From Ylistrum balloti (lineage: Eukaryota), in the NCBI RefSeq assembly GCF_031769215.1, contig NW_026781921.1, positions 124,001 to 188,000 of the forward strand: a stretch of 64,000 nucleotides of DNA, written 5' to 3'. The position numbers and the translations under genes were made by a program. Below, piece by piece: positions 16,863-63,930 of the stretch. The notes under the pieces are model-generated. The model made no database searches. It saw only the letters and a list, made by a program, of their open reading frames with translations, and was not told the origin of the DNA. Each line of letters begins with the position of its first letter. The stretch's first letter is position 1.

Positions 16863-17084
16863 GTTTCTACACATTTCTTTAATTGGTGCAATTTGTCAGT
16901 AAAAAAGTATTTTATATTGTTGGGTTTTGTTTTGCATCCTTATGATAACACTGGTAATATTTATGACATGTTAACGTGTAATGTATGAATGAAAAAGAGA
17001 TATGCACTAAAGGAATGATCACTAGAATCGAGTCAAGAAGAAAATACCAGCATGTCAACAATATTATAATACAAACTCAAATTA

Positions 17085-17575
17085 TTAACAAAAGAAACAT
17101 TTACATAGAGTTTCCTGTATAAGTACAAGGAGAATAAGACCAGGTTTTCCGGAAGAGTAAGCGTCTTCTGCTTCATCGACAAAAGCCGCTATATAAACCT
17201 TGGTAAATCCAAGTAATGTCTTGTTCTCATTGTGAACGAGGTATACGACAATGGAGCCAAGAGGTAAACTAACCAGCATCAAACAAGTCCAGCGTCACAG
17301 AGCACAGAGAAATACAATATTCTCAACGAGACCACTACGAACTAGAACTTCCCCCATAATTTTCACTAACCTGAATCTTTTGAAACCCCGTTCCTAGTTG
17401 ACGATTCTTGCACGAAAATGGTAATAATGGTAACAGGCACTTGAGTATCGAATCAACTGCGATATGTCAATACCATAGGTTGGGGATGCAGGCGGATTGC
17501 CGTCAAGAAAAGGAAAATTCACAATAGGGAAGTTGAAATTATCACCTTATTATACAGCTTGGTTGAAAGCTGTCT
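17085..17575 (-). mobile_element. Penelope-like retroelement 3' fragment (RT C-terminus plus 3' tail)
   Basis: Minus strand reads RQLSTKLYNK/DNFNFPIVNFPFLDGNPPASPTYGIDISQLIRYSSAC, typical of the PLE (Naiad/Chlamys-like) RT thumb; tail motif at 17130-17190. Confidence 0.85.
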
Positions 17576-20721: not shown

Positions 20722-20900
20722 AGAGTGTGACATTACTTAGTTGGATTGACCAAGATTTACATGACAAATGTTGTCGAAAAAACGCTTATTATTCCGGAAC
20801 ACGTGGTCTTATTCTCCTTTTCTCTCACTTTTCCAGGTGTCCCCGTGTAAATCATATTGTGTTCTTGTGTTGTCCTCTCATTTGACTATATTGTATCTAC
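20722..20900 (+). mobile_element. PLE 3'-tail fragment
   Basis: ttggattgacc...gtcgaaaaaacgcttattattccggaacacgtggtcttattctcc matches the tails at 17130 and 28188. Confidence 0.75.
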
Positions 20901-24079: not shown

Positions 24080-24190
24080 AAATTGACTAAGATTTACATG
24101 ACGGTTATTGTCGATGAAATAAAGGAAGCTTATTATTCCGTAACATCTGTTCTGATTCTCATTGTACTTTTCAGGGGTCCGTTTTCTTTT
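24080..24190 (+). mobile_element. PLE 3'-tail fragment
   Basis: acggttattgtcgatgaaataaaggaagcttattattccgtaacatctgttctgattctc. Confidence 0.7.
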
Positions 24191-25379: not shown

Positions 25380-25565
25380 CTAACATGGATTGACCAATAT
25401 TTAAATGGTGGTTGTCTTCGAAGAAATAGAAGACGCGTATTCTTCCGAAACACATGGTCATATTCTTCTTTTACATTTGTTGTCAGAATTCTCCGTGTAA
25501 ATCTTTAATTAATTAAGATATTTTGCCCTGATTTCATCTCGAATTTGACTTTGAATTAAGATTCT
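25380..25565 (+). mobile_element. PLE 3'-tail fragment
   Basis: ggattgacc...gaagaaatagaagacgcgtattcttccgaaacacatggtcatattc...attttgccctg. Confidence 0.7.
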
Positions 25566-40289: not shown

Positions 40290-41330
40290 ATACAAGGCTT
40301 AGGTGTGCGGTATTTGGCGTGAAGTGCCGGACAATTGGTGACGGGCGTGAAGTTACGGTTGTGAGACGCCTAGGTGGAGTTGCCGGGCGTGTGGTGCCGG
40401 ACGTGAGATGACCGGCTTAAGTTGTAATGCGTGAGGATCCGGGCGTGAGGTGCCTGACATGGAGTTTCGAACGTGAGGTTCCAGACGTGAAGTGCCGGGC
40501 ATGAGGTGTCGGACACGAAGTTCCGGACGTGAGGTTCCAGACGTGAAGTGCCGGGCGTGAGGTGTCGGACACGAAGTTCCGGACGTGAGGTTCCAGACGT
40601 GAAGTGCCGGGCGTGAGGTGTCGGACACGAAGTTCCGCACGTGAGGTTCCAGACGTAAAGTGCCGGGCGTGAGGTGTCAGACACGAAGTTCCGGACGTGA
40701 AGTGCCGGGCGTGAGGTGTCGGACACGAAGTTCCGGACGTGAGGTTCCAGACGTGAAGTGCCGGGCGTGAGGTGTCGGACATGAAGTTCCGGACGTGAGG
40801 TCCAAGACGTGAAGTGCCGGGCGTGAGGTGTCGGACATGTAGTTCCGGACGTTACCGGGCGTGTGGTGCTGGGCGTGAGGTTGCGGACGTGAGATGCCGG
40901 ACTTAAATTGCTATGCGTGAGGATCCGGGCATGAGGTGCCGGCCATGAAGTGCCGGGCATGTCGAGTGGTGACGGGCGTGAGCTTGTAGGACCCCTAGAT
41001 AGAGTTGCATGGCGTGTGGTGCTGGGCGTGAAGTTGAGGACGTAATATGTCCGGCTTTAGTTGCCATGCATCAGGAGCCGGGCGTGAAGTGCCGACATGA
41101 AGTTACGGACGCAGGGTTCCAAACGTGAAGTGCCGAGCGTGAGATGTTTAAAACTCAGTTGCCGACGTGAGATGCATGGCGGGAGGTGCTGGGACACAGG
41201 TGCCGGGTGTGAGATACATGGGTATAGTTGCCGGACAAAGAGGTGCTTAGCGGGAGGCGCCGGGCGTGTGGTGCCGCTCGTGAGATACCTGGATTTACTT
41301 GCCGGACGTGATTTGCCGGGCATGGGAATG
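40290..41330. repeat. GC/CpG-rich 14-bp satellite with a 56-bp higher-order core (40442-40850)
   Basis: ggcgtgaggtgtcg / gacacgaagttccg / gacgtgaggttcca / gacgtgaagtgccg repeated about 7 times. Confidence 0.9.
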
Positions 41331-45552: not shown

Positions 45553-45645
45553 ACTTGGATTGACCTGGGTTACCCTTACTGGTGTTGTCGATGAAGCATC
45601 AAACGTTTACTCTTACGGAACACCTGGACATTTTCTTCCTGTATC
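45553..45645 (+). mobile_element. PLE 3'-tail fragment
   Basis: ttggattgacctggg...ggtgttgtcgatgaagcatcaaacgtttactcttacggaacacctgg. Confidence 0.75.
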
Positions 45646-47332
45646 TATAAATACAATGTCAAAATTTTGCTCTCGTTTCATCAATTGAGATTGATTTTCG
45701 TAAACAGAATCTGATTAAGGTTCTGTTAACGACCAACATATTGCTAGCGATTAATCCAGAGCCTTGAAATTAATTACGACCAATACATAGCCGTTCTTGA
45801 TACAAACATTTAAACTTTTTTAAAAGAAACTTAGAAATGAAAGCAGGACCGATCTGCAATGTGAAATAAGCAGGAGGCTTTGTCTTTCACACGCATTTAA
45901 CATCTTCTGAAGTCCTGAGAGTTCCATTGTTTTTATCGATGCTATCGCGATCTCCAATACATTTATCCTTCGCCATGCTGTAAGCCTGATCGCCTGATTA
46001 AACCTCTAAATATATAATATTGGAGTCCTTATCAGAGTCGATCCAAAACAATACTAACACAGCCTTTCGGACTCCTAATGATATATGCCAAAGATGACAT
46101 TGTTTTCATAAAAACGGACAGTAAATCGGTGACTAGGTTGACACTTGTACTAATATTTCACAACAATGTAAACATCATCCGCTCTATCCTGTTTTAACGT
46201 TCAACCAGACCACCCATTTTTGTGCCAGCAAAATTACAAACATTTCGACAACGTTATTTCGTATCAGCATAGAATGGAATGCACACGACATGTTGAAAGA
46301 ACTCTGAAAGAACTATCGGTGTTGCTTATGATTGCAATATTGCAATAAGACAATCATTAAGTTGATTTGATATAAAGCAATTGTCTAGTGGTAATTAAGT
46401 TTTCTAGCTGGCAAGAAAACACAAAGATTGTTTACACAATAAATGGACTTGATAGTATGTGGATTGTAAAGAGTCCAAAATATTTCTTGACCAATCTTCA
46501 AACATATTTTTTTATTTGAGATATTTTCACACTGTGTAACGCCATACCCATTTCAAACTGATATAACTCTTGTTACGAGAGTTGTCTTCTCCAAGAAAGG
46601 GGGTACAAATATTTTTGTTACCGTTGCTGTAGGAGATTTAGAGGATTCGCGAAGACAGACGAACAACTTATTTCTGATATGCATTACACCGACTCATAAT
46701 GGTACCACATTTATATCCATCTTAAAGAAGAGTTGGTTCCACGTGCTTGTTAGCTCGCTGTCGTTATAATAAGACCAAGTGAAGAGTCATTCCAATGTGT
46801 TCAGGTCCGGTTTGTTCAGTGTGATTACAATATAAAGCGCCGATCGGTTGCCGTATCATTCGTAGATACTATCCACCTAAAATCATAGTTGTTGTGAATA
46901 GGCCAGAGAACAAATGTCAGTTAGCATAATACATTTATCATTTGTTTTAATCCGTCTATTCGAGAAAATTCTTGTTTGTGAATTTAAAAACATTCCCTGT
47001 AGTCTTACTTCCGTTTTGATCCTGACTACTTTTTTATTGATGAACATTTGTTACCTATACGCTGAAGACGACCAAGAGTATTTTCAACGATGAATGTTTA
47101 CAATAGGCCTCTATTGTTATTGAAATAGACTCCCGTTCGTCCAGCGAGTTAACGCTGAGACGCTGTTCACAGAAACACTATGTTTAGTTAACGATAATTG
47201 GCCTAACTTATCTTGAATGATGTTTTGCTTCAGAAAATTTTCAACAAACTAAGCTACGAAACAGCTGTTAATGATAATTATCTAAACGTTATAAGATTGA
47301 TCTGATCAACGGTTTAGAAGTATTAAATAATG

Positions 47333-49099: not shown

Positions 49100-49210
49100 A
49101 CAACGTGAAATTACTAAGGTCGACATGGTAATAATCACGTGACGGGCTCGTTAATGAAGCAGAAGACGCTAATTAATTGGAACACTTGGTCTTACTTTCC
49201 TTGTACGTTT
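49100..49210 (+). mobile_element. PLE 3'-tail fragment
   Basis: gacgggctcgttaatgaagcagaagacgct...ggaacacttggtcttactttcc. Confidence 0.7.
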
Positions 49211-50479: not shown

Positions 50480-50612
50480 CGACAGAATCTTAAACTAAAC
50501 ACATAGAAAGGACAAAAGATGATAAAATTTGGCATCACACAGAGAACCCTGAAAAAAGGCAAGGGCAACATCAGATGTCCCGAAGGTTTCTACTTCATCG
50601 ACGACACACGTC
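50480..50612 (-). mobile_element. PLE 3'-tail fragment with internal deletion
   Basis: cagatgtcccgaagg|tttctacttcatcgacgacacacg. Confidence 0.6.
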
Positions 50613-51254
50613 TAATGATATCATCGTCAGCCCAAGCCGCACAATAACGACAATTAGCGAGGGCAAACAGGCGAAGATTATCATTCTGTCGAGGCGACAA
50701 AACGAAACAAAGGAATTGCAGAATTCAGGCACCATAGAAATTTGTTATTCAGTTTTGTGCGTTTTACAAACTCTATTTCACTTATTGCTTAACCAACGTG
50801 TTACATAACAGTGAGAGCAGTGTTTAAACTTCTGAAAATAAATTAGCCTAATTCAAATCATCGATTATGTATTCAAATATGTATTACTCATTCAGAAAGT
50901 GTAGAGACGGCAGTTTCTAGCTTAACGCGTACAGAAACAATTGTAAATTTCATCTACAGATTTGAAATTTAGATGCGTTTGTCTTGTGGGAATGATTTTG
51001 TTATGAGGCCGTCATGTATCGCTGCTATAGTGCATTGACCTCACAAGACGGAAACCTAATTTACACTCCATCTCAGTGTGTAATATAGACCTGGTGCAAT
51101 ACCAAAATGTAAGTGGGGAAGATGTAGGTTGTTACGATGAATCCCTCTATATGTGTAATAAAGACATATCTACATACTGAAGGAATTTATTAAATAACCA
51201 GTAATAACACAATTTTTTAAGTAATCCGACTTTTTATGAAGAAAACAAGAAATT

Positions 51255-51540: not shown

Positions 51541-52610
51541 TTCCACTAAAATAATCTAATTTGACAAATAAATAAAATAAACCATCTTCACTTATCTGCT
51601 TGGTGTTCCCAATATGATTTTTACGGTCGATTGCAGTCGGAGATGGCCTTTTCCTATTAATCATGAAAATATTGAGTTTGAATGTGTTATTCGCCTTTGT
51701 TTATGCTGTGGGGTTTTTTCACGATAAGTGCATATGGTGTCTCTACATCCGTAGGAAATTGTTAGGCGATCGTTCTCTTTTGGTCGAGAGCCGAGCACCA
51801 AATGTGATTATTTGCTTCATTTCAGGGTTTTAACACACATATACAAGTACAACGCCATCGATATGACAACGCTTTCCAACAACAGGTATGAAATATCATT
51901 CTAGGTGTTGATAAATATCCCGACCTACGTCACAAAGACAATCTCTTCTGTCAGACGGCTCTCTGGAATTTTAAATACCTCTATAAATCATTGTGTATAC
52001 AAATGCCGGAAGTCACTGCAACCTTGAAAAATAACACAAGAGACATTGAGAATCATCTTTTGCATTTACTCGGCGTAATGTTTATTATTGTTTGTCAGAG
52101 TGTTTTATGTAGTTCTCATGATTTTACGATACAAAAAGGACTTACCGAGCCCCTAACTCTGATAACCTTCAGTAGGATCCCGTTGACAGTACAGATGGCG
52201 CTACAGTGTATTGCATGATAGCATTGGAATACGGTGTGGTTGAATTTTATTTTATTTTTATTTTATAACACGAACAATATTATTTATCTATGGTGTTCGT
52301 TTTCATCAGAAAAGTTCTGTATGTACACGTTTAAAAGCACAAGAAAACATATCAACATAATCATGATACAAACTCATATTGATGGAAACTTGGGCAAATA
52401 TGAACACAAAATGACTATCACGTGGACACCTGAAAAGTACAAGGTGTTATACAAAGAAAGCACAGGTGAATAGCATATTCAATTAAAACATATTTTTAAT
52501 TAGAGATAATAGAGCGAAACAATTATTTAAACTGCATAAAATTATACAACTGTTTGTTTCGCTCTTCTATGACTCGTTAGTGATGCTAATAGACTGGGCG
52601 ACTGAGGATA

Positions 52611-52820
52611 GAAAAAGCGTTCCGGAAGAGTAAACTTCTTCGGCTTTATTGACGATGCCCGCCATGTCTTTTTCAGATGGAAGATACTGCCGGTGGAGTT
52701 AAATCCCCAAGGTTTGCCGTAAAGTCAATGTTTTAAATGTCTTCTGTCGCCTCCAAGGTTTAAAATGTCATGCCCTTAGCATCAATGGAGAGTCATAGAA
52801 GGACGAAACAGCTGTATATC
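52611..52820. mobile_element. PLE tail (minus) joined to a pLTR-like segment with a degenerate hammerhead (plus, 52772-52820)
   Basis: ttccggaagagtaaacttcttcggctttattgacgatgcccgcc then gatactgccggtgga...cccttagcatcaATGGAGAgtcatagaaggacGAAACagctGTA; the CUGANGA box is mutated. Confidence 0.7.
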
Positions 52821-54780: not shown

Positions 54781-55040
54781 GTTCTAAGGCTAGGACAGGA
54801 GTACCTCTCTTTTATAACTATGACGTCACGTCATAAATACAACGCATTGGGGTAACAGCAAAAACAAAGAAGGCAAGAAAGGGAGGAGGAGGGATCTAAA
54901 GGTTCATTTCCTTAGTGGAGAGATAGGGGGTCACAACATTCAGGAAAAGGTTTCTCATCAAGCCTCGTGTTTGTTAGCTTAATTATCTTTCCCCTTTCCC
55001 CCTATTTCACCCTCAAGCCAGTGAAAGATTTTTGTTTATT

Positions 55041-55084
55041 TTCCGAAAGGGTAAGCGTCTTTTGCCACATCGACGACATCCCCT
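55041..55084 (-). mobile_element. PLE 3'-tail fragment
   Basis: ttccgaaagggtaagcgtcttttgccacatcgacgacatcccc. Confidence 0.65.
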
Positions 55085-55345
55085 CAACTAATCAATACAA
55101 GGAGAAGGTGAATACGTTACAAAACAAGACATTATCTACAGGATTACAATGTGCAAATAGATGACAATAGGAAAATACCATGGACAAAGGTATGTTTTAT
55201 TACAATGCACGGATGTTTCACGTACAAAAACGATGATCATGAAGTCTTTGTTGGAGATGGATAGATCAAAGATTGTACAAAAGACGAACAGGTGAACAGT
55301 ATCATTCTACACAAATTAAGAATTAGATACAGATGGGTCATTCTT

Positions 55346-56784: not shown

Positions 56785-56860
56785 CAATAAATCTATGAAC
56801 AAAGAAAAGAATTACACAGAGACTTCTAAAACAGTACAAAGCGAATAAGACCAAGTGGCC
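56785..56860 (-). mobile_element. PLE distal 3'-tail fragment
   Basis: Reverse complement cacttggtcttattcgctttgtactgttttagaagtctctgtgtaattc matches the family tail. Confidence 0.55.
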
Positions 56861-58574: not shown

Positions 58575-58667
58575 CGTGACATACATATCTGGATTGACCC
58601 AGATTTAAATGTCGGATGTCATCAGTGAGGCAGACAACACTCATCCTTCTAGAACACCTGGTCTTCG
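58575..58667 (+). mobile_element. PLE 3'-tail fragment (diverged)
   Basis: ggattgaccc...gtcggatgtcatcagtgaggcagacaacactcatccttctagaacacctggtctt. Confidence 0.6.
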
Positions 58668-61200: not shown

Positions 61201-62409
61201 CGAGGTTTACCGTAACCTGCATGTCGCGTTTTAATTTGAATTGTGAGACGGCTTATGATATACACTTGCCGTACTTTTGACAGATTCAACATTTAAAGTT
61301 AAGAAATATATCTGTTTTGGGGTTCAGACACCTTCCGATTTTCGTAGTAGCCTCTTAGGCTTGAACAGGTTGGGCCATTGACAAGATCAACTCATCCTAG
61401 GAGACCGAGGTAGTTGTATGGTACAGTCTGATTCATCATTTTCTTCTATCGTAACTTCAATCCAAATTTATATTTTTATATTAATTATTTTTAATCGATT
61501 TGTTTTGCGGTTCGAGTGTAAATGCCATAGTCTCAGATATTGTTATTAAGGCTTCATAAATATGATACGTGTGCGTTATTGCACGATATGTTTCCTGCAC
61601 GTGTTTATCACGTCCTAATCATTTTATAATGTGTCCAGACTCTACCAGGTGCTATGTTAACTATTTCCGACACCGTGTGTCATTCGTCGGAATGTTCCTG
61701 TTTTTTCTGTGTGATATTAGATTGAGGAATGCCATCTTGACGTCTGGTACAATGAATCAACATATCATTTTCGATAAGAAAATGTAAACTGGTGGATCAG
61801 ATTATATATTTAGCGACAGAAAAGAAAAAAACAAATCACATCAACTTTGTTGTTAGTCGATACTGCAACATATACATCAACCATTTTTTTTATAATCATT
61901 TTTTTGAAAAAAAAAGCTCAGAATATACTCATGTATGTTCCTGTTCCCAAAAAGTTATCAGACATTTCAAAAAATGATACAAATTAATTCAATTATGGAA
62001 CAAGTGAGTCCCGCTAGATTATTTTTATATTTCTTTCGATCAATTTGTAATTCTCTCCTAATACAGTGCAGGCATCACACTTTAGACCACAAGCATTGCC
62101 GACATTGATGAACAGTTTAATTCAGCATTTGACTCTACTCTTTTTACTTCTAAACGTGTGTCAAAAACGAGCCTTTTACTTATGTGTTTTTGTACATCAT
62201 TGCATATTTTTCTTTGGAAGCATCGCTCATCATCAATGTCAATGACAATGCATTGATGATGTTGATGATTGAAGCTGGTAGGATGTATTTTTGAAACGTT
62301 TTGAAACCGACTTACTCCAGTTACTAATACTCTATTGATAACACAAGCTTCCAGAACGTTATGAAAATCATAGACAAAAGAAACATTTACGCAGTGTCTC
62401 CTATAAAAT

Positions 62410-62460
62410 AAAGTACAAATAGAATAAGACCAGATGTTCTGGAATGGTAAGCGTCTTTTG
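62410..62460 (-). mobile_element. PLE 3'-tail fragment
   Basis: gaataagaccagatgttctggaatggtaagcgtctttt. Confidence 0.7.
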
Positions 62461-63369: not shown

Positions 63370-63930
63370 GATAAGATTTTCCAACAGACTAATGGGACAC
63401 TTAGGTGAACTTATTGTGCCCCTCTGTTTGCTGACTTCTTTTGTTTACAAACGAGGGTGAATTTATTGAAGAGCTTATCAAAACAGTTCACAAAGCCCTG
63501 GTAAAGACGTGTAATTTCACTTGCAAATATATTGATGACGTCTTGTCTATAAATAACAACAAATATATTGACCACTTCAATCGTATATACCAACCAGAAA
63601 TGGAAACCAAGGACACGACAGACTCTTCTACACCAGCTGCTTATCTCGATATTTCCCTACCACAACACCAACATCAAAACCAAACTGTATGAAAAGCACG
63701 ATGGTTTCACTTTCCCTATTGTGATTTTTTTCTTTTCTGGATAGCAACTCCCTTGTGTCTCTAACCTATGGTGCTTTCATGTTGCAGGTAATACCACTTT
63801 CAAGGGCATGTGGATAACCTGGTCTTATTATCCTTGTACTTTTTCAGGAGCCTCCGTGTTAATCTTTATTTTGTTCATATTTTGCCCTAGTTTTATTGAA
63901 TCAGAATTTGGATTATGATTATGTTGACGT
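63370..63930 (+). mobile_element. Penelope-like retroelement RT fragment plus 3' tail
   Basis: IFQQTNGT..TYCAPLFADF/FTNEGEFI..L.K..HKALVKTCNFTCKYIDDVLSINN...RIYQPEMETKDTTDSSTPAAYLDISL/LYEKHDGFTFPIV: RT motif B and YIDD motif C of PLE type. Confidence 0.9.

What the first reader, a model, noticed from the sequence alone, without database searches (positions are those of the whole stretch)
17130..17190. Recurrent ~55-nt PLE 3'UTR motif that folds as a pseudoknot, with apparent cross-species covariation
Seen: the motif recurs at about 17130, 20765, 24100, 25410, 28188, 31500, 34415, 45580, 49140, 50570, 52615, 55041, 58610 and 62420. By-eye consensus in RT sense: CGGGTGT-CGTCGATG-AAGCAG-AAGAC-GCTTACYCTTCCGGA-ACACC-TG-GTCTT. 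GGTGT/ACACC and AAGAC/GTCTT are interleaved stems (H-type pseudoknot), with a near-palindrome in the first loop. Recalled from memory and unverified: the equivalent mussel repeat has GGTGC/GCACC and GAACT/AGTTC, and the oyster repeat has GGTGT/GCACC and GGGAT/ATCCC, at identical positions around invariant GCTTAC and CACCTG. That would be full compensatory change of the second stem. Strand order resembles HDV P1/P2, but there is no P1.1, P4 or catalytic C, so it is not a canonical HDV ribozyme. Inference: an undescribed structured RNA element (RT recognition or packaging signal, or a new ribozyme) of bivalve PLEs.
Basis: partly seen in the sequence, partly recalled or inferred. Interest (0 to 1): 0.75.

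Follow-up and report, generated by a model that had tools for sequence, protein, structure and literature searches.

The report
Conserved pseudoknotted RNA in Naiad retroelements
The repeated motif is the core of a roughly 100-nt folded RNA domain in the 3' untranslated tail of a very abundant invertebrate retroelement (Naiad-type Penelope-like element); its helices are kept by compensatory base changes across eight element families, and it carries a self-complementary stretch that suggests two RNA copies pair, none of which appears in the literature or Rfam as searched.

Summary
Observation confirmed. All 14 listed sites, plus two more, are copies of one repeat. It has over 1,100 exact core copies in this genome against 0 for the control.

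The repeat is the 3' end of a retroelement. Full-length homologues have an N-terminal GIY-YIG nuclease and a C-terminal reverse transcriptase, which is the Naiad-type PLE layout. Naiads are reported to lack hammerhead ribozymes.

I recovered the same 3'UTR motif from eight element families in at least seven other samples. Most were reached through protein homology, blind to the stems.
- **Stem 2** occurs in seven fully complementary versions (96% paired; all 5 pairs change on both sides).
- **Stem 1** is 5-6 bp (91% paired).
- **New parts:** an outer closing helix and a downstream hairpin, giving a ~100-nt pseudoknotted four-helix domain.
- **Strand:** G.U outnumbers A.C 82 to 20, so the sense RNA is what folds.
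- **Palindrome:** a 10-nt stretch in the first loop takes nine different sequences. It stays self-complementary through its centre, which no hairpin can explain, so I infer RNA homodimerisation.

There is no Rfam match, hammerhead or HDV architecture, coding signal or preferred cleavage-defined copy end.

Best reading: a cis-acting RT-recognition and dimerisation domain; function is inferred. Other windows' first readers noted the motif; none was checked.

The parts
17038..17500 (-). 5'-truncated, decayed copy of a Naiad-type PLE. It holds the end of the RT ORF, with the stop codon TAG at 17271-17269, and a 3'UTR of about 230 nt running to about 17038.
   Evidence: the alignment to genomic copies spans query positions 11-317; the ORF end is read in sister copies.
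17099..17198 (-). The whole structured RNA domain of this copy, from the outer-helix 5' strand to the outer-helix 3' strand.
   Evidence: Alignments A1 and A2, the RNAalifold outer helix and the MFE folds.
17190..17195 (-). S0 5' strand (outer closing helix). It pairs with about 17103-17108. In this copy the helix extends over 17189-17198 with 17099-17108.
   Evidence: 85.5% paired against 22-57% slid; 5 of 6 pairs change on both sides.
17182..17187 (-). S1 5' strand. The family reads GGGUGU; this copy is mutated to GCUUUU.
   Evidence: helix 1 is 91.4% paired, and its first pair is G.U in 19 of 31 copies; the family letters are seen in other copies.
17173..17182 (-). pal1: a 10-nt self-complementary stretch (UCGUCGAUGA in the family; this copy reads UUGUCGAUGA, because column 17 is the mutated last base of the S1 5' strand). 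It shares its first base with S1.
   Evidence: 93.5% complementary, including the adjacent centre pair; the homodimer is -12.5 kcal/mol and the monomer hairpin is 0.
17168..17172 (-). Conserved unpaired AGCAG. C and A are invariant or nearly so.
   Evidence: list of invariant columns.
17163..17167 (-). S2 5' strand (AAGAC).
   Evidence: helix 2 is 96.1% paired, and all 5 pairs change on both sides.
17157..17162 (-). Invariant unpaired GCUUAC.
17147..17154 (-). pal2: an 8-nt palindrome, UUCCGGAA.
   Evidence: 96% complementary. Variants that keep the palindrome are UCCGCGGA in family C and UUCGCGAG in one B2 copy.
17142..17147 (-). S1 3' strand. The family reads ACACCU; this copy reads AAACCU.
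17136..17140 (-). S2 3' strand (GUCUU). One invariant G (17141) separates it from S1.
17112..17132 (-). H3 hairpin: CUCCU, an 11-nt U-rich loop, then AGGAG. This copy reads AGGAA.
   Evidence: every family has a hairpin starting 1-4 nt after S2.
20739..20850 (+). Decayed copy of the domain.
   Evidence: E=3.9e-10.
24082..24176 (+). Decayed copy of the domain.
   Evidence: E=7.1e-10.
25383..25498 (+). Decayed copy of the domain.
   Evidence: E=1.5e-11.
28154..28237 (-). Copy of the domain with S2 intact.
   Evidence: E=6e-11.
31490..31565 (-). Copy with small deletions inside the domain.
34391..34478 (-). Decayed copy.
   Evidence: E=4.1e-08.
45553..45651 (+). Decayed copy; S2 is broken.
49106..49208 (+). 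Decayed copy.
   Evidence: E=3e-07.
50538..50629 (-). Weak, strongly decayed copy.
   Evidence: E=0.069.
52610..52667 (-). Copy truncated after the S1 3' strand.
55039..55087 (-). Copy truncated after pal2.
56812..56860 (-). Weak copy holding the 3' part only.
   Evidence: E=0.09.
58588..58666 (+). Decayed copy.
   Evidence: E=2.8e-07.
62387..62460 (-). Copy that lacks S1 5' and pal1.
63808..63860 (+). Copy with an internal deletion. RT coding sequence (..LSRAC) is joined directly to the 3' half of the domain.

Best explanation
**What it is (shown by comparison).** The motif is the core of a roughly 100-nt cis-acting RNA domain in the sense-strand 3'UTR of one clade of Naiad-type Penelope-like retroelements.
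- An outer helix S0 (6-10 bp) closes the domain.
- Helix S1 (5-6 bp, with a G.U at its base) and hairpin H3 branch from it.
- Five bases in the S1 loop pair with the five bases that follow the S1 3' strand after a single G. This is S2, the pseudoknot.
- The unpaired stretches AGCAG, GCUUAC, the junction G and an A after S2 are invariant or nearly so.
- Two loop segments are self-complementary: a 10-mer whose sequence differs between families, and an 8-mer around CCGG.

**How it works (inferred).**
- The folded domain is the mark by which the element's own reverse transcriptase picks and positions its template RNA for target-primed reverse transcription.
- The family-specific 10-mer lets two RNAs of the same family pair. 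This would suit an enzyme thought to act as a dimer that nicks and extends both DNA strands. It would also suit the tandem and inverted insertions typical of PLEs.
For: **Covariation**
- S1 and S2 together are 93.5% paired, against 30-50% when partners are slid by 1-3 columns. Nine of 11 pairs change on both sides, and 0 of 500 shuffles reach this.
- The unfiltered 46-copy set gives 87.2% paired against 31-49%.
- S2 has seven versions: AAGAC/GUCUU, GAACU/AGUUC, GUAAU/AUUAC, GAGGC/GCCUC, GAAAU/AUUUC, AGAAC/GUUCU and GGAAC/GUUCC.
- Families A-E were reached through protein homology alone, blind to the stems.
- RNAalifold found S0 without prompting. It is 85.5% paired, against 22-57% slid.
- Every family has the H3 hairpin.
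- Three copies in one tandem array show S1 going from G:C through G.U to A:U (L189).

**Strand**
- The helices hold 82 G.U pairs against 20 A.C.
- The sense-strand MFE is lower than the antisense MFE in all four families tested.

**Palindrome**
- pal1 is 93.5% complementary across 9 different 10-mers. This includes the two centre pairs, which cannot pair within one molecule.
- Predicted homodimers are -8 to -19 kcal/mol. The monomer hairpin is 0 in 8 of 9.
- Families that share a genome differ in pal1. The B/B2 heterodimer is -0.1 kcal/mol, and F/G is -7.4 against -13.8 and -16.5 for their homodimers.

**Not coding**
- Variation shows no 3-periodicity. Third codon positions are invariant in the loops.

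**Context from the literature**
- Naiads lack hammerheads (PMC8557442).
- A canonical PLE RT needs a specific RNA segment, starts cDNA internally, cuts and extends both strands, and is predicted to be a dimer (PMC11167929).
Against: - No experiment bears on the function. RT binding and dimerisation are inferences from sequence alone.
- Single-sequence folding z-scores are modest, from 0 to -2.6. The pseudoknot is not scored in them.
- The eight families are related, so the shuffle controls overstate independence.
- Families F and G came from regions next to the queried gene. They were first seen in a scan that required pairing, although a core-only scan finds them too.
- Family C has a U-U mismatch at the centre of pal1, and its pal1 homodimer is weak (-8.1 kcal/mol).
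- Not every related element has the domain. L192, the 3' flank of the queried gene in L191, and the distant Naiad L228 lack it.
- The first base of pal1 is also the last base of S1, so both cannot form fully at once.
Confidence: 0.6

Rival explanations
1. It is a new class of self-cleaving ribozyme. It would stand in for the hammerhead that canonical PLEs carry in their pseudo-LTRs, cutting multimeric or read-through transcripts.
For: - Naiads lack canonical hammerheads, yet they share the tandem arrangement of other PLEs (PMC8557442).
- The domain has about 12 invariant or near-invariant unpaired bases packed around a pseudoknotted junction.
- S1 begins with a G.U pair, as P1 of HDV-like ribozymes does.
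Against: - No ribozyme family in Rfam matches, even at E up to 10.
- The strand order differs from HDV: the S2 3' strand comes before the hairpin. There is no P1.1 and no J4/2 cytosine.
- The 'CGAUGA' of the window family lies in pal1, which varies freely between families. It therefore cannot be a hammerhead core.
- Among the 100 rows listed for each of the two own-genome pattern searches, the upstream flank is continuous in about 90-95% by eye. Break points are scattered, with no preferred copy end at S1 or inside the motif.
- The two palindromes are left unexplained.
Confidence: 0.12
2. It is a structured RNA with another post-transcriptional role. One option is an exonuclease-resistant (xrRNA-like) knot that protects the 3' tail. 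Others are a 3'-end processing, export or translation element.
For: - The fold is a closed multi-helix junction whose pseudoknot involves the junction strand. In outline this resembles viral 3'UTR xrRNAs (my own knowledge, not tested here).
- 3' ends of these elements are far more abundant than full-length copies (PMC8557442).
Against: - No Rfam xrRNA or other 3'UTR family matches.
- Genomic copies do not start preferentially just upstream of the domain.
- Family-specific palindromes are not a feature of xrRNAs.
- Only assembled contigs were on hand, so RNA ends could not be mapped.
Confidence: 0.15
3. The conservation acts on DNA. The palindromes would be binding sites for a dimeric protein, such as a host factor or the element's own nuclease, or part of a promoter, because PLE pseudo-LTRs carry the promoter.
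For: - pal1 and pal2 are DNA palindromes in most families.
- In PLEs the transcription start lies in the pseudo-LTR (PMC8557442).
Against: - pal1 changes its sequence completely between families and keeps only self-complementarity. That is how nucleic-acid pairing behaves, not a protein recognition site.
- The abundant window family keeps pal1 only through G.U pairs, which are mismatches in DNA.
- G.U outnumbers A.C 82 to 20 in the helices.
- Long-range compensatory changes in S0, S1 and S2 have no meaning at the DNA level.
Confidence: 0.05
4. The stretch is protein-coding, for example a read-through or second ORF. One frame across the domain (..QELLTLPEHL..) is free of stops in six of the eight families.
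For: - Over the 108-nt domain, frame 2 has no stop in six of the eight family representatives; E and G each have one stop at the third codon, upstream of the conserved stretch.
- Gene callers predict 'genes' over the domain, for example a 144-aa call at L193:10735-11169.
Against: - Variation shows no 3-periodicity: 2.05, 2.10 and 2.19 distinct letters per codon phase.
- Third positions in the loops are invariant, although the RT proteins of the same families share only 47-75% identity with the query.
- The variable positions change in complementary pairs.
- The frame is cut off from the RT ORF by its stop codon.
Confidence: 0.02

Closest known systems
Retroviral dimerisation initiation site (HIV-1 SL1/DIS) and other dimer-linkage palindromes in structured viral termini, such as the 16-nt DLS in the HCV 3'X element (PMC12809093, abstract seen)
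   Same: - A short self-complementary sequence sits in an exposed part of a conserved structured UTR domain of a replicating RNA.
- The palindrome sequence differs between lineages while self-complementarity is kept.
- Predicted homodimers are much more stable than heterodimers between families that share a genome.
   Different: - Here the palindrome is 10 nt. It lies in the large loop of a pseudoknotted helix in the 3'UTR of a PLE, not in a hairpin loop of a 5' leader.
- Neither Gag nor packaging is known for PLEs.
- Dimer formation has not been tested.
3'UTR recognition elements of stringent non-LTR retrotransposons (the R2 3'UTR, the UnaL2/eel LINE 3' stem-loop); named from my own knowledge
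   Same: - A conserved folded RNA near the 3' end of a retroelement that uses target-primed reverse transcription.
- It is presumed to be the handle by which the element's own RT picks its template.
   Different: - No sequence or structure match: Rfam holds these families and nothing matched.
- The element class differs (PLE, with a TERT-like RT and a GIY-YIG nuclease).
- The architecture is a pseudoknotted four-helix domain with palindromes.
Hammerhead ribozymes in the pseudo-LTRs of canonical PLEs and of retrozymes
   Same: A small conserved structured RNA in the non-coding terminal part of a PLE.
   Different: - There is no CUGANGA...GAAA core at conserved positions and no three-helix hammerhead junction.
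- Rfam hammerhead models do not match.
- Naiads are reported to lack canonical hammerheads (PMC8557442).
HDV-like ribozymes of R2, L1Tc and other retrotransposons
   Same: Two interleaved helices, and a G.U pair at the base of the first helix.
   Different: - The strand order is S1, S2, S1', S2', hairpin. In HDV it is P1, P2, P3, P1', P4, P2'.
- There is no P1.1, no P3/L3 and no catalytic C.
- The domain lies inside a 3'UTR, not at a 5' end. No copy ends fall at the S1 base. Rfam gives no match.
Telomerase RNA core (core-enclosing helix, pseudoknot and single-stranded template); named from my own knowledge
   Same: - The partner enzyme is the closest relative of TERT (PMC8557442).
- The domain is a closing helix around a pseudoknot, with an invariant single-stranded hexamer.
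   Different: - No homology was detected; Rfam telomerase RNA models do not match.
- There is no evidence for a triple helix, or that GCUUAC is copied.
- The resemblance is one of layout only.

Membership tests
Naiad-type Penelope-like element (the carrier of the motif) | Reverse transcriptase domain in the single ORF | tested here: met
   RVT_1 is found in homologues that share the C-terminal region. P0230 scores 30.2 bits against a cut-off of 29.6. P0071, P0025, P0212 and P0157 give weaker hits.
Naiad-type Penelope-like element (the carrier of the motif) | GIY-YIG endonuclease placed N-terminal to the RT (permuted order) | tested here: met
   In full-length homologues GIY-YIG lies at residues 77-203 of 960-1055, and the region matching this family's C-terminus lies at about 650-980. 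P0208 scores 24.0 and P0157 scores 22.7, against a cut-off of 22.6. This was shown in homologues, not in this genome's decayed copies.
Naiad-type Penelope-like element (the carrier of the motif) | CxC linker motif and CCHH motif of the nuclease | not tested
   I did not align against reference Naiads. The paper's supplement is not held.
Naiad-type Penelope-like element (the carrier of the motif) | No canonical hammerhead ribozyme | tested here: met
   Rfam gives no hammerhead match in the window or in three loci from other families.
Naiad-type Penelope-like element (the carrier of the motif) | Partial-tandem or inverted insertion structures (pseudo-LTRs) | tested here: inconclusive
   L168 holds two copies tail to tail. 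L189 holds a tandem array with a unit of about 7.7 kb. I did not analyse these systematically.
H-type (interleaved two-stem) RNA pseudoknot | Two helices whose strands interleave, both kept by compensatory change | tested here: met
   S1 is columns 12-17 with 52-57, and S2 is columns 32-36 with 59-63, in alignment A1. S1 is 91.4% paired and S2 96.1%. Nine of 11 pairs change on both sides, and 0 of 500 shuffles reach this. The result is robust on A2. The loop lengths (14, 15 and 1 nt) differ from the classical compact type.
Hammerhead ribozyme | Conserved core CUGANGA ... GAAA around a three-helix junction | tested here: not met
   The only core-like string (CGAUGA) lies in pal1. That stretch reads CCACUAGUGG, UCUUAUAAGA, UCAGUACUGA and so on in other families. 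Rfam gives no match.
HDV-like ribozyme | Nested double pseudoknot P1/P1.1/P2/P3/P4 with a catalytic C in J4/2, and cleavage 5' of P1 | tested here: not met
   The strand order is different, and no P1.1 or P3 can be drawn. Rfam gives no match. Genomic copies do not start at the base of S1. Catalysis itself cannot be tested here.
Dimer-linkage / DIS-like RNA element | Self-complementary sequence, variable between lineages but always palindromic, in an unpaired part of a conserved fold | tested here: met
   pal1 is 93.5% complementary over 5 pair positions, including the centre. It takes 9 distinct 10-mers, and all 5 positions change on both sides. Homodimers are -8 to -19 kcal/mol, against 0 for the monomer hairpin.
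Dimer-linkage / DIS-like RNA element | Physical RNA-RNA dimer that depends on the palindrome | not testable with these tools
   This needs native gel, SEC or cross-linking experiments.
Any Rfam 15 family | Score at or above the family's gathering threshold | tested here: not met
   There are 0 matches in the window at gathering thresholds. At E up to 10, none overlaps the motif in L168, L043 or L190.

The most novel reading that the evidence does not exclude
The domain would be the PLE counterpart of the telomerase RNA core. A closing helix, a pseudoknot and an invariant single-stranded hexamer would be held by a TERT-like RT, making it a surviving intermediate between a retroelement template and a dedicated telomerase RNA. 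Its family-specific palindrome would make the template a dimer. The dimeric enzyme would then copy two RNAs from the two nicked DNA strands. That would explain the head-to-head and tandem insertions that have set PLEs apart since their discovery.
Probability: 0.12. Interest if true: 0.92.

Novelty: new variant of a known kind. Interest (0 to 1): 0.78.

Why it matters
- **A gap in PLE biology.** PLEs are the third class of eukaryotic retroelements and the closest relatives of telomerase, yet their mobilisation is barely understood. Naiads are reported to dominate bivalve and other invertebrate genomes with tens of thousands of copies. They were a puzzle because they lack the hammerhead found in other PLEs (PMC8557442).
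- **A concrete handle.** A conserved, covariation-supported RNA domain in their 3'UTR could be the RNA partner for the RT. It also offers a testable dimerisation code that may explain PLE insertion architecture.
- **A new RNA family.** It could be added to Rfam-type libraries.
- **Better annotation.** The domain is a sharp marker for the very abundant 'unknown' 3'-end repeats in mollusc assemblies. It also explains spurious ORF calls over it (..QELLTLPEHL..) that enter protein databases.

Tried and rejected
- **Hammerhead-like core** (also suggested by earlier scan note s1-254445): rejected. The core-like letters lie in the freely varying palindrome, and Rfam does not match.
- **HDV-like fold:** rejected on strand order and on the lack of any Rfam match.
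- **tRNA-derived SINE:** no tRNA is present.
- **Coding:** rejected.
- **DNA-level palindrome:** disfavoured by G.U pairs and by the sequence turnover between families.
- **Cleavage-defined copy ends:** none was seen in the own-genome flanks.
- **Other Naiad families in this genome:** 20 copies with only 51-61% protein identity all turned out to belong to the same decayed DNA family.
- **Own-genome GIY-YIG hits:** these belong to other, canonical PLEs with a C-terminal nuclease. None has the motif downstream.
- **The 875-aa 'gene' at L193:** it is a low-complexity tandem repeat, not a PLE ORF.
- **Metagenome scan with the 14-base core:** most hits were chance hits in bacterial contigs. About 12 were true copies, all of families B or B2.
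- **Viral contig scan:** 0 hits.
- **Distant Naiads (38-42% identity):** L228, which has about 100 nt of 3' flank, shows no motif. L227 ends with its gene, so it is uninformative.
- **Supplement of PMC8557442 (Naiad consensus library):** not held.
- **RNA evidence:** only assembled contigs were available, so transcript ends and strand could not be read.
- **Further own-genome fetches:** I did not attempt them any other way.
not found in the sequences I could reach.
- **Single-sequence thermodynamic z-scores:** weak, from 0 to -2.6. I do not use them as support.
Full report
**1. The observation**

- The 15-nt core has 8 matches in the window at 2 or fewer mismatches, against 0.04 expected.
- A profile search with the surrounding 116 nt finds 16 copies on both strands.
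- In the whole 648.5-Mb assembly the exact 15-nt loop occurs 1,128 times. The stem-1/palindrome 15-mer occurs 1,381 times. The reversed control gives 0 in both cases.
- The copy at 17130-17190 is a decayed one. Its stem-1 strands carry mutations that most copies, here and in related organisms, lack.

**2. What carries it**

Aligning 30 genomic copies shows that the repeat is the 3' end of a longer element.
- An ORF ending ..KFYGRH.DLIEKY.ISLCDMKLDVFDA. stops at a TAG (window 17271-17269).
- A 3'UTR of about 230 nt follows. The motif begins about 70-80 nt after the stop codon.
- The genome holds over 12,000 candidate matches to the C-terminal 179 aa. All those scored are decayed.
- Pfam sees nothing above threshold in the C-terminal part.
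- An exhaustive protein search with a 312-aa homologue finds 27,796 relatives. Several are 960-1055 aa long and match at their C-terminus.
- These long proteins have GIY-YIG at residues about 77-203 and RVT_1 at about 650-880.

That is the permuted nuclease-then-RT order that defines the Naiad/Chlamys clade of Penelope-like elements. Naiads are reported to dominate bivalve genomes and to lack canonical hammerheads (PMC8557442). A bivalve host is my inference.

**3. Related sequences from elsewhere**

A word-based protein search with the 179-aa C-terminus returned 1,478 homologues from unnamed public assemblies. I fetched the DNA around representatives of different protein clusters and read their 3' flanks. 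The motif sits at the same place after the stop codon in these families:

| Family | Locus or source | Stem 2 version |
|---|---|---|
| A | this genome and L168 | AAGAC/GUCUU |
| B2 | L071, L064 | same stems as B, different palindrome |
| C | L166, L167 | GUAAU/AUUAC |
| D | L189 | GAGGC/GCCUC |
| E | L190 | GAAAU/AUUUC |
| F | near the queried gene in L191 | AGAAC/GUUCU |
| G | near the queried gene in L191 | GGAAC/GUUCC |

- Families F and G were found by a structural scan. A core-only scan that ignores the stems finds them too.
- The structural scan gave 2 hits on reversed sequence over about 1 Mb.
- Three related elements lack the motif in the flank available: L192, the 3' flank of the queried gene in L191, and the distant L228. 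The domain therefore marks a subclade, not all Naiads.

**4. The structure**

In a MAFFT alignment of 31 natural copies, columns 1-63 have no gaps (A1).

| Element | A1 columns | Cells paired | Slid control | Pairs changed on both sides |
|---|---|---|---|---|
| S1 | 12-17 with 52-57 | 91.4% | – | 4 of 6 |
| S2 | 32-36 with 59-63 | 96.1% | – | 5 of 5 |
| S1 + S2 | – | 93.5% | 30-50% | 9 of 11 |
| S0 | 4-9 with 105-110 | 85.5% | 22-57% | 5 of 6 |

- For S1 and S2 together, 0 of 500 shuffles reach the observed values. This includes the count of pairs changed on both sides, which the tool's own trials rate as seldom misleading.
- Adding every decayed copy I had gives 46 sequences (A2). They are still 87.2% paired, against 31-49% slid.
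- RNAalifold proposed the outer helix S0 without prompting.
- Single-sequence folds of eight families give the same picture. S0 continues into S1, and a hairpin H3 starts just after S2.
- The S2 3' strand is the junction strand between S1 and H3. S2 is therefore a loop-to-junction pseudoknot, and one invariant G lies between S1 and S2.
- Within one tandem array (L189), three copies show S1 position 3 as G:C, G.U and A:U.
- Across all helices there are 82 G.U pairs and 20 A.C. The sense fold is always more stable than the antisense fold. The folded molecule is therefore the sense RNA.
- Folding z-scores alone are unremarkable, from 0 to -2.6.

**5. The palindromes**

Ten bases at columns 17-26, which include the last base of the S1 5' strand, are self-complementary in every family but differ in sequence between them:
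- UCGUCGAUGA in family A. UCAUCGAUGA is the commonest form in contigs of related organisms.
- CCACUAGUGG, UCUUAUAAGA, UCAGUACUGA, CCGCAUGCGG, UCACUAGUGA and UCACGCGUGA in six other families.
- AAGCUUGCUU in family C, with a central U-U mismatch.

All five pair positions change on both sides, and 93.5% of cells are complementary. This includes the adjacent centre pair 21-22 and its neighbour 20-23. Those bases cannot pair within one molecule, and the 10-mers have no stable hairpin (0 kcal/mol in 8 of 9). As homodimers they give -8 to -19 kcal/mol.

Families that share a genome differ in this stretch. B/B2 pair at -0.1 kcal/mol. F/G pair at -7.4, against -13.8 and -16.5 for their homodimers.

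A second palindrome of 8 nt (UUCCGGAA or UUCCGGAG) lies in the other half of the S1 loop. It has two palindrome-preserving variants: UCCGCGGA in family C and UUCGCGAG in one B2 copy.

Self-complementarity that survives complete sequence turnover is how nucleic-acid pairing behaves, not protein recognition. I therefore read pal1 as an RNA-RNA dimerisation site. This is an inference.

**6. What it is not**

- Rfam 15 gives no match in the window at gathering thresholds. At E up to 10, nothing overlaps the motif in three families. No tRNA is present.
- The hammerhead-like letters of family A fall inside the variable palindrome.
- The strand order rules out the HDV fold.
- The domain is not coding. 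Variation is not 3-periodic, and loop third positions are invariant, although one frame has no stop in six of the eight families.
- Among the 100 rows listed for each of the two own-genome pattern searches, the upstream flank is continuous in about 90-95% by eye. The rest have scattered break points. Nothing marks a cleavage site.

**7. How it most likely works**

*Shown:* this is a conserved, pseudoknotted, sense-strand RNA domain with invariant unpaired bases and a family-specific self-complementary stretch. It sits in the 3'UTR of a very successful retroelement clade.

*Inferred:* it is the site where the element's RT recognises and positions its own RNA. The palindrome pairs two RNAs of the same family.

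Three things are reported for the only PLE studied biochemically (PMC11167929):
- The RT needs a specific RNA segment and starts cDNA internally.
- The protein nicks and extends both DNA strands.
- The protein is predicted to be a dimer.

Two templates held together would fit the inverted and tandem insertions typical of PLEs (PMC8557442). Rivals are a new ribozyme, an xrRNA-like or other post-transcriptional element, and a DNA-level site. My odds are in the structured fields.

**8. Novelty**

- Full-text searches for the motif strings, and for Naiad/PLE together with structure or dimerisation terms, found no description.
- The Naiad paper searched only for hammerheads and SECIS elements.
- The library does not cover most subscription journals, so an earlier description cannot be excluded.
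- Four first-reader notes from other windows of this genome flagged the same motif. None had been checked, and they are not independent evidence.

**9. Limits**

- Organism names are hidden or absent.
- The eight families are related.
- No raw RNA reads were available.
All sequences used are natural copies.

Noticed in passing
L168:825-2934 (ENA ERZ928222 contig, same family as the window): Two copies of the element's 252-aa C-terminal ORF lie tail to tail, at 825-1583 on the plus strand and 2176-2934 on the minus strand. Their 3'UTR domains face each other about 360 nt apart. The resulting long inverted repeat draws a spurious weak miRNA-precursor hit from Rfam (MIR2630, 50 bits against a threshold of 144).
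   Followed up: partly
L189:2815-18380: A tandem array with a unit of about 7.7 kb carries one domain per unit, at 2851, 10671 and 18309. The record name of the 22.8-kb contig ends in '_c'. The three units show a G:C, G.U, A:U series at one stem-1 pair.
   Followed up: partly
G000:C422:240415-261997 and G000:C129:50248-67783: There are other, apparently intact PLEs of the canonical type. They have 755-aa open frames with the GIY-YIG domain near the C-terminus. On C422 they repeat in tandem about every 5.3 kb. They do not carry the motif.
   Followed up: partly
L192:4587-4800 (TARA metagenome contig): A related element (P0101) has a different 3'UTR. It forms a hairpin, AGGUUU ... AAACCU, whose loop holds the 8-nt palindrome GGCCGGCC. 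This may be a second solution to the same dimerisation problem.
   Followed up: no
window:63764-63871 (+): In this copy the RT coding sequence (..YGAFMLQVIPLSRAC) is joined directly to the 3' half of the domain. About 330 nt are missing between the two.
   Followed up: no
L193:10735-11169, and frame 2 of the domain in all families: The domain and the UTR after it are free of stops in one frame (..RRV....QELLTLPEHL..). Gene callers therefore predict proteins there, such as a 144-aa call. These non-coding tails probably seed spurious protein clusters in metagenome databases.
   Followed up: partly
L193:16994-19621 (-): A called 875-aa 'gene' is a low-complexity tandem repeat that is open in several frames. 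It is not a retroelement ORF, and Pfam finds no family in it.
   Followed up: yes
window:37149-39106 (-) and 40370-40960 (-): These are the longest open frames in the window (163-244 aa). None has a Pfam family above threshold. Their nature is unknown.
   Followed up: no
window:16800-17600 laid on runs X6, X7, X9: In contigs of other, coded organisms, some from runs guessed to be RNA, hundreds of pieces align only over 17124-17177. The motif core is therefore by far the most conserved part of the element across related species.
   Followed up: partly
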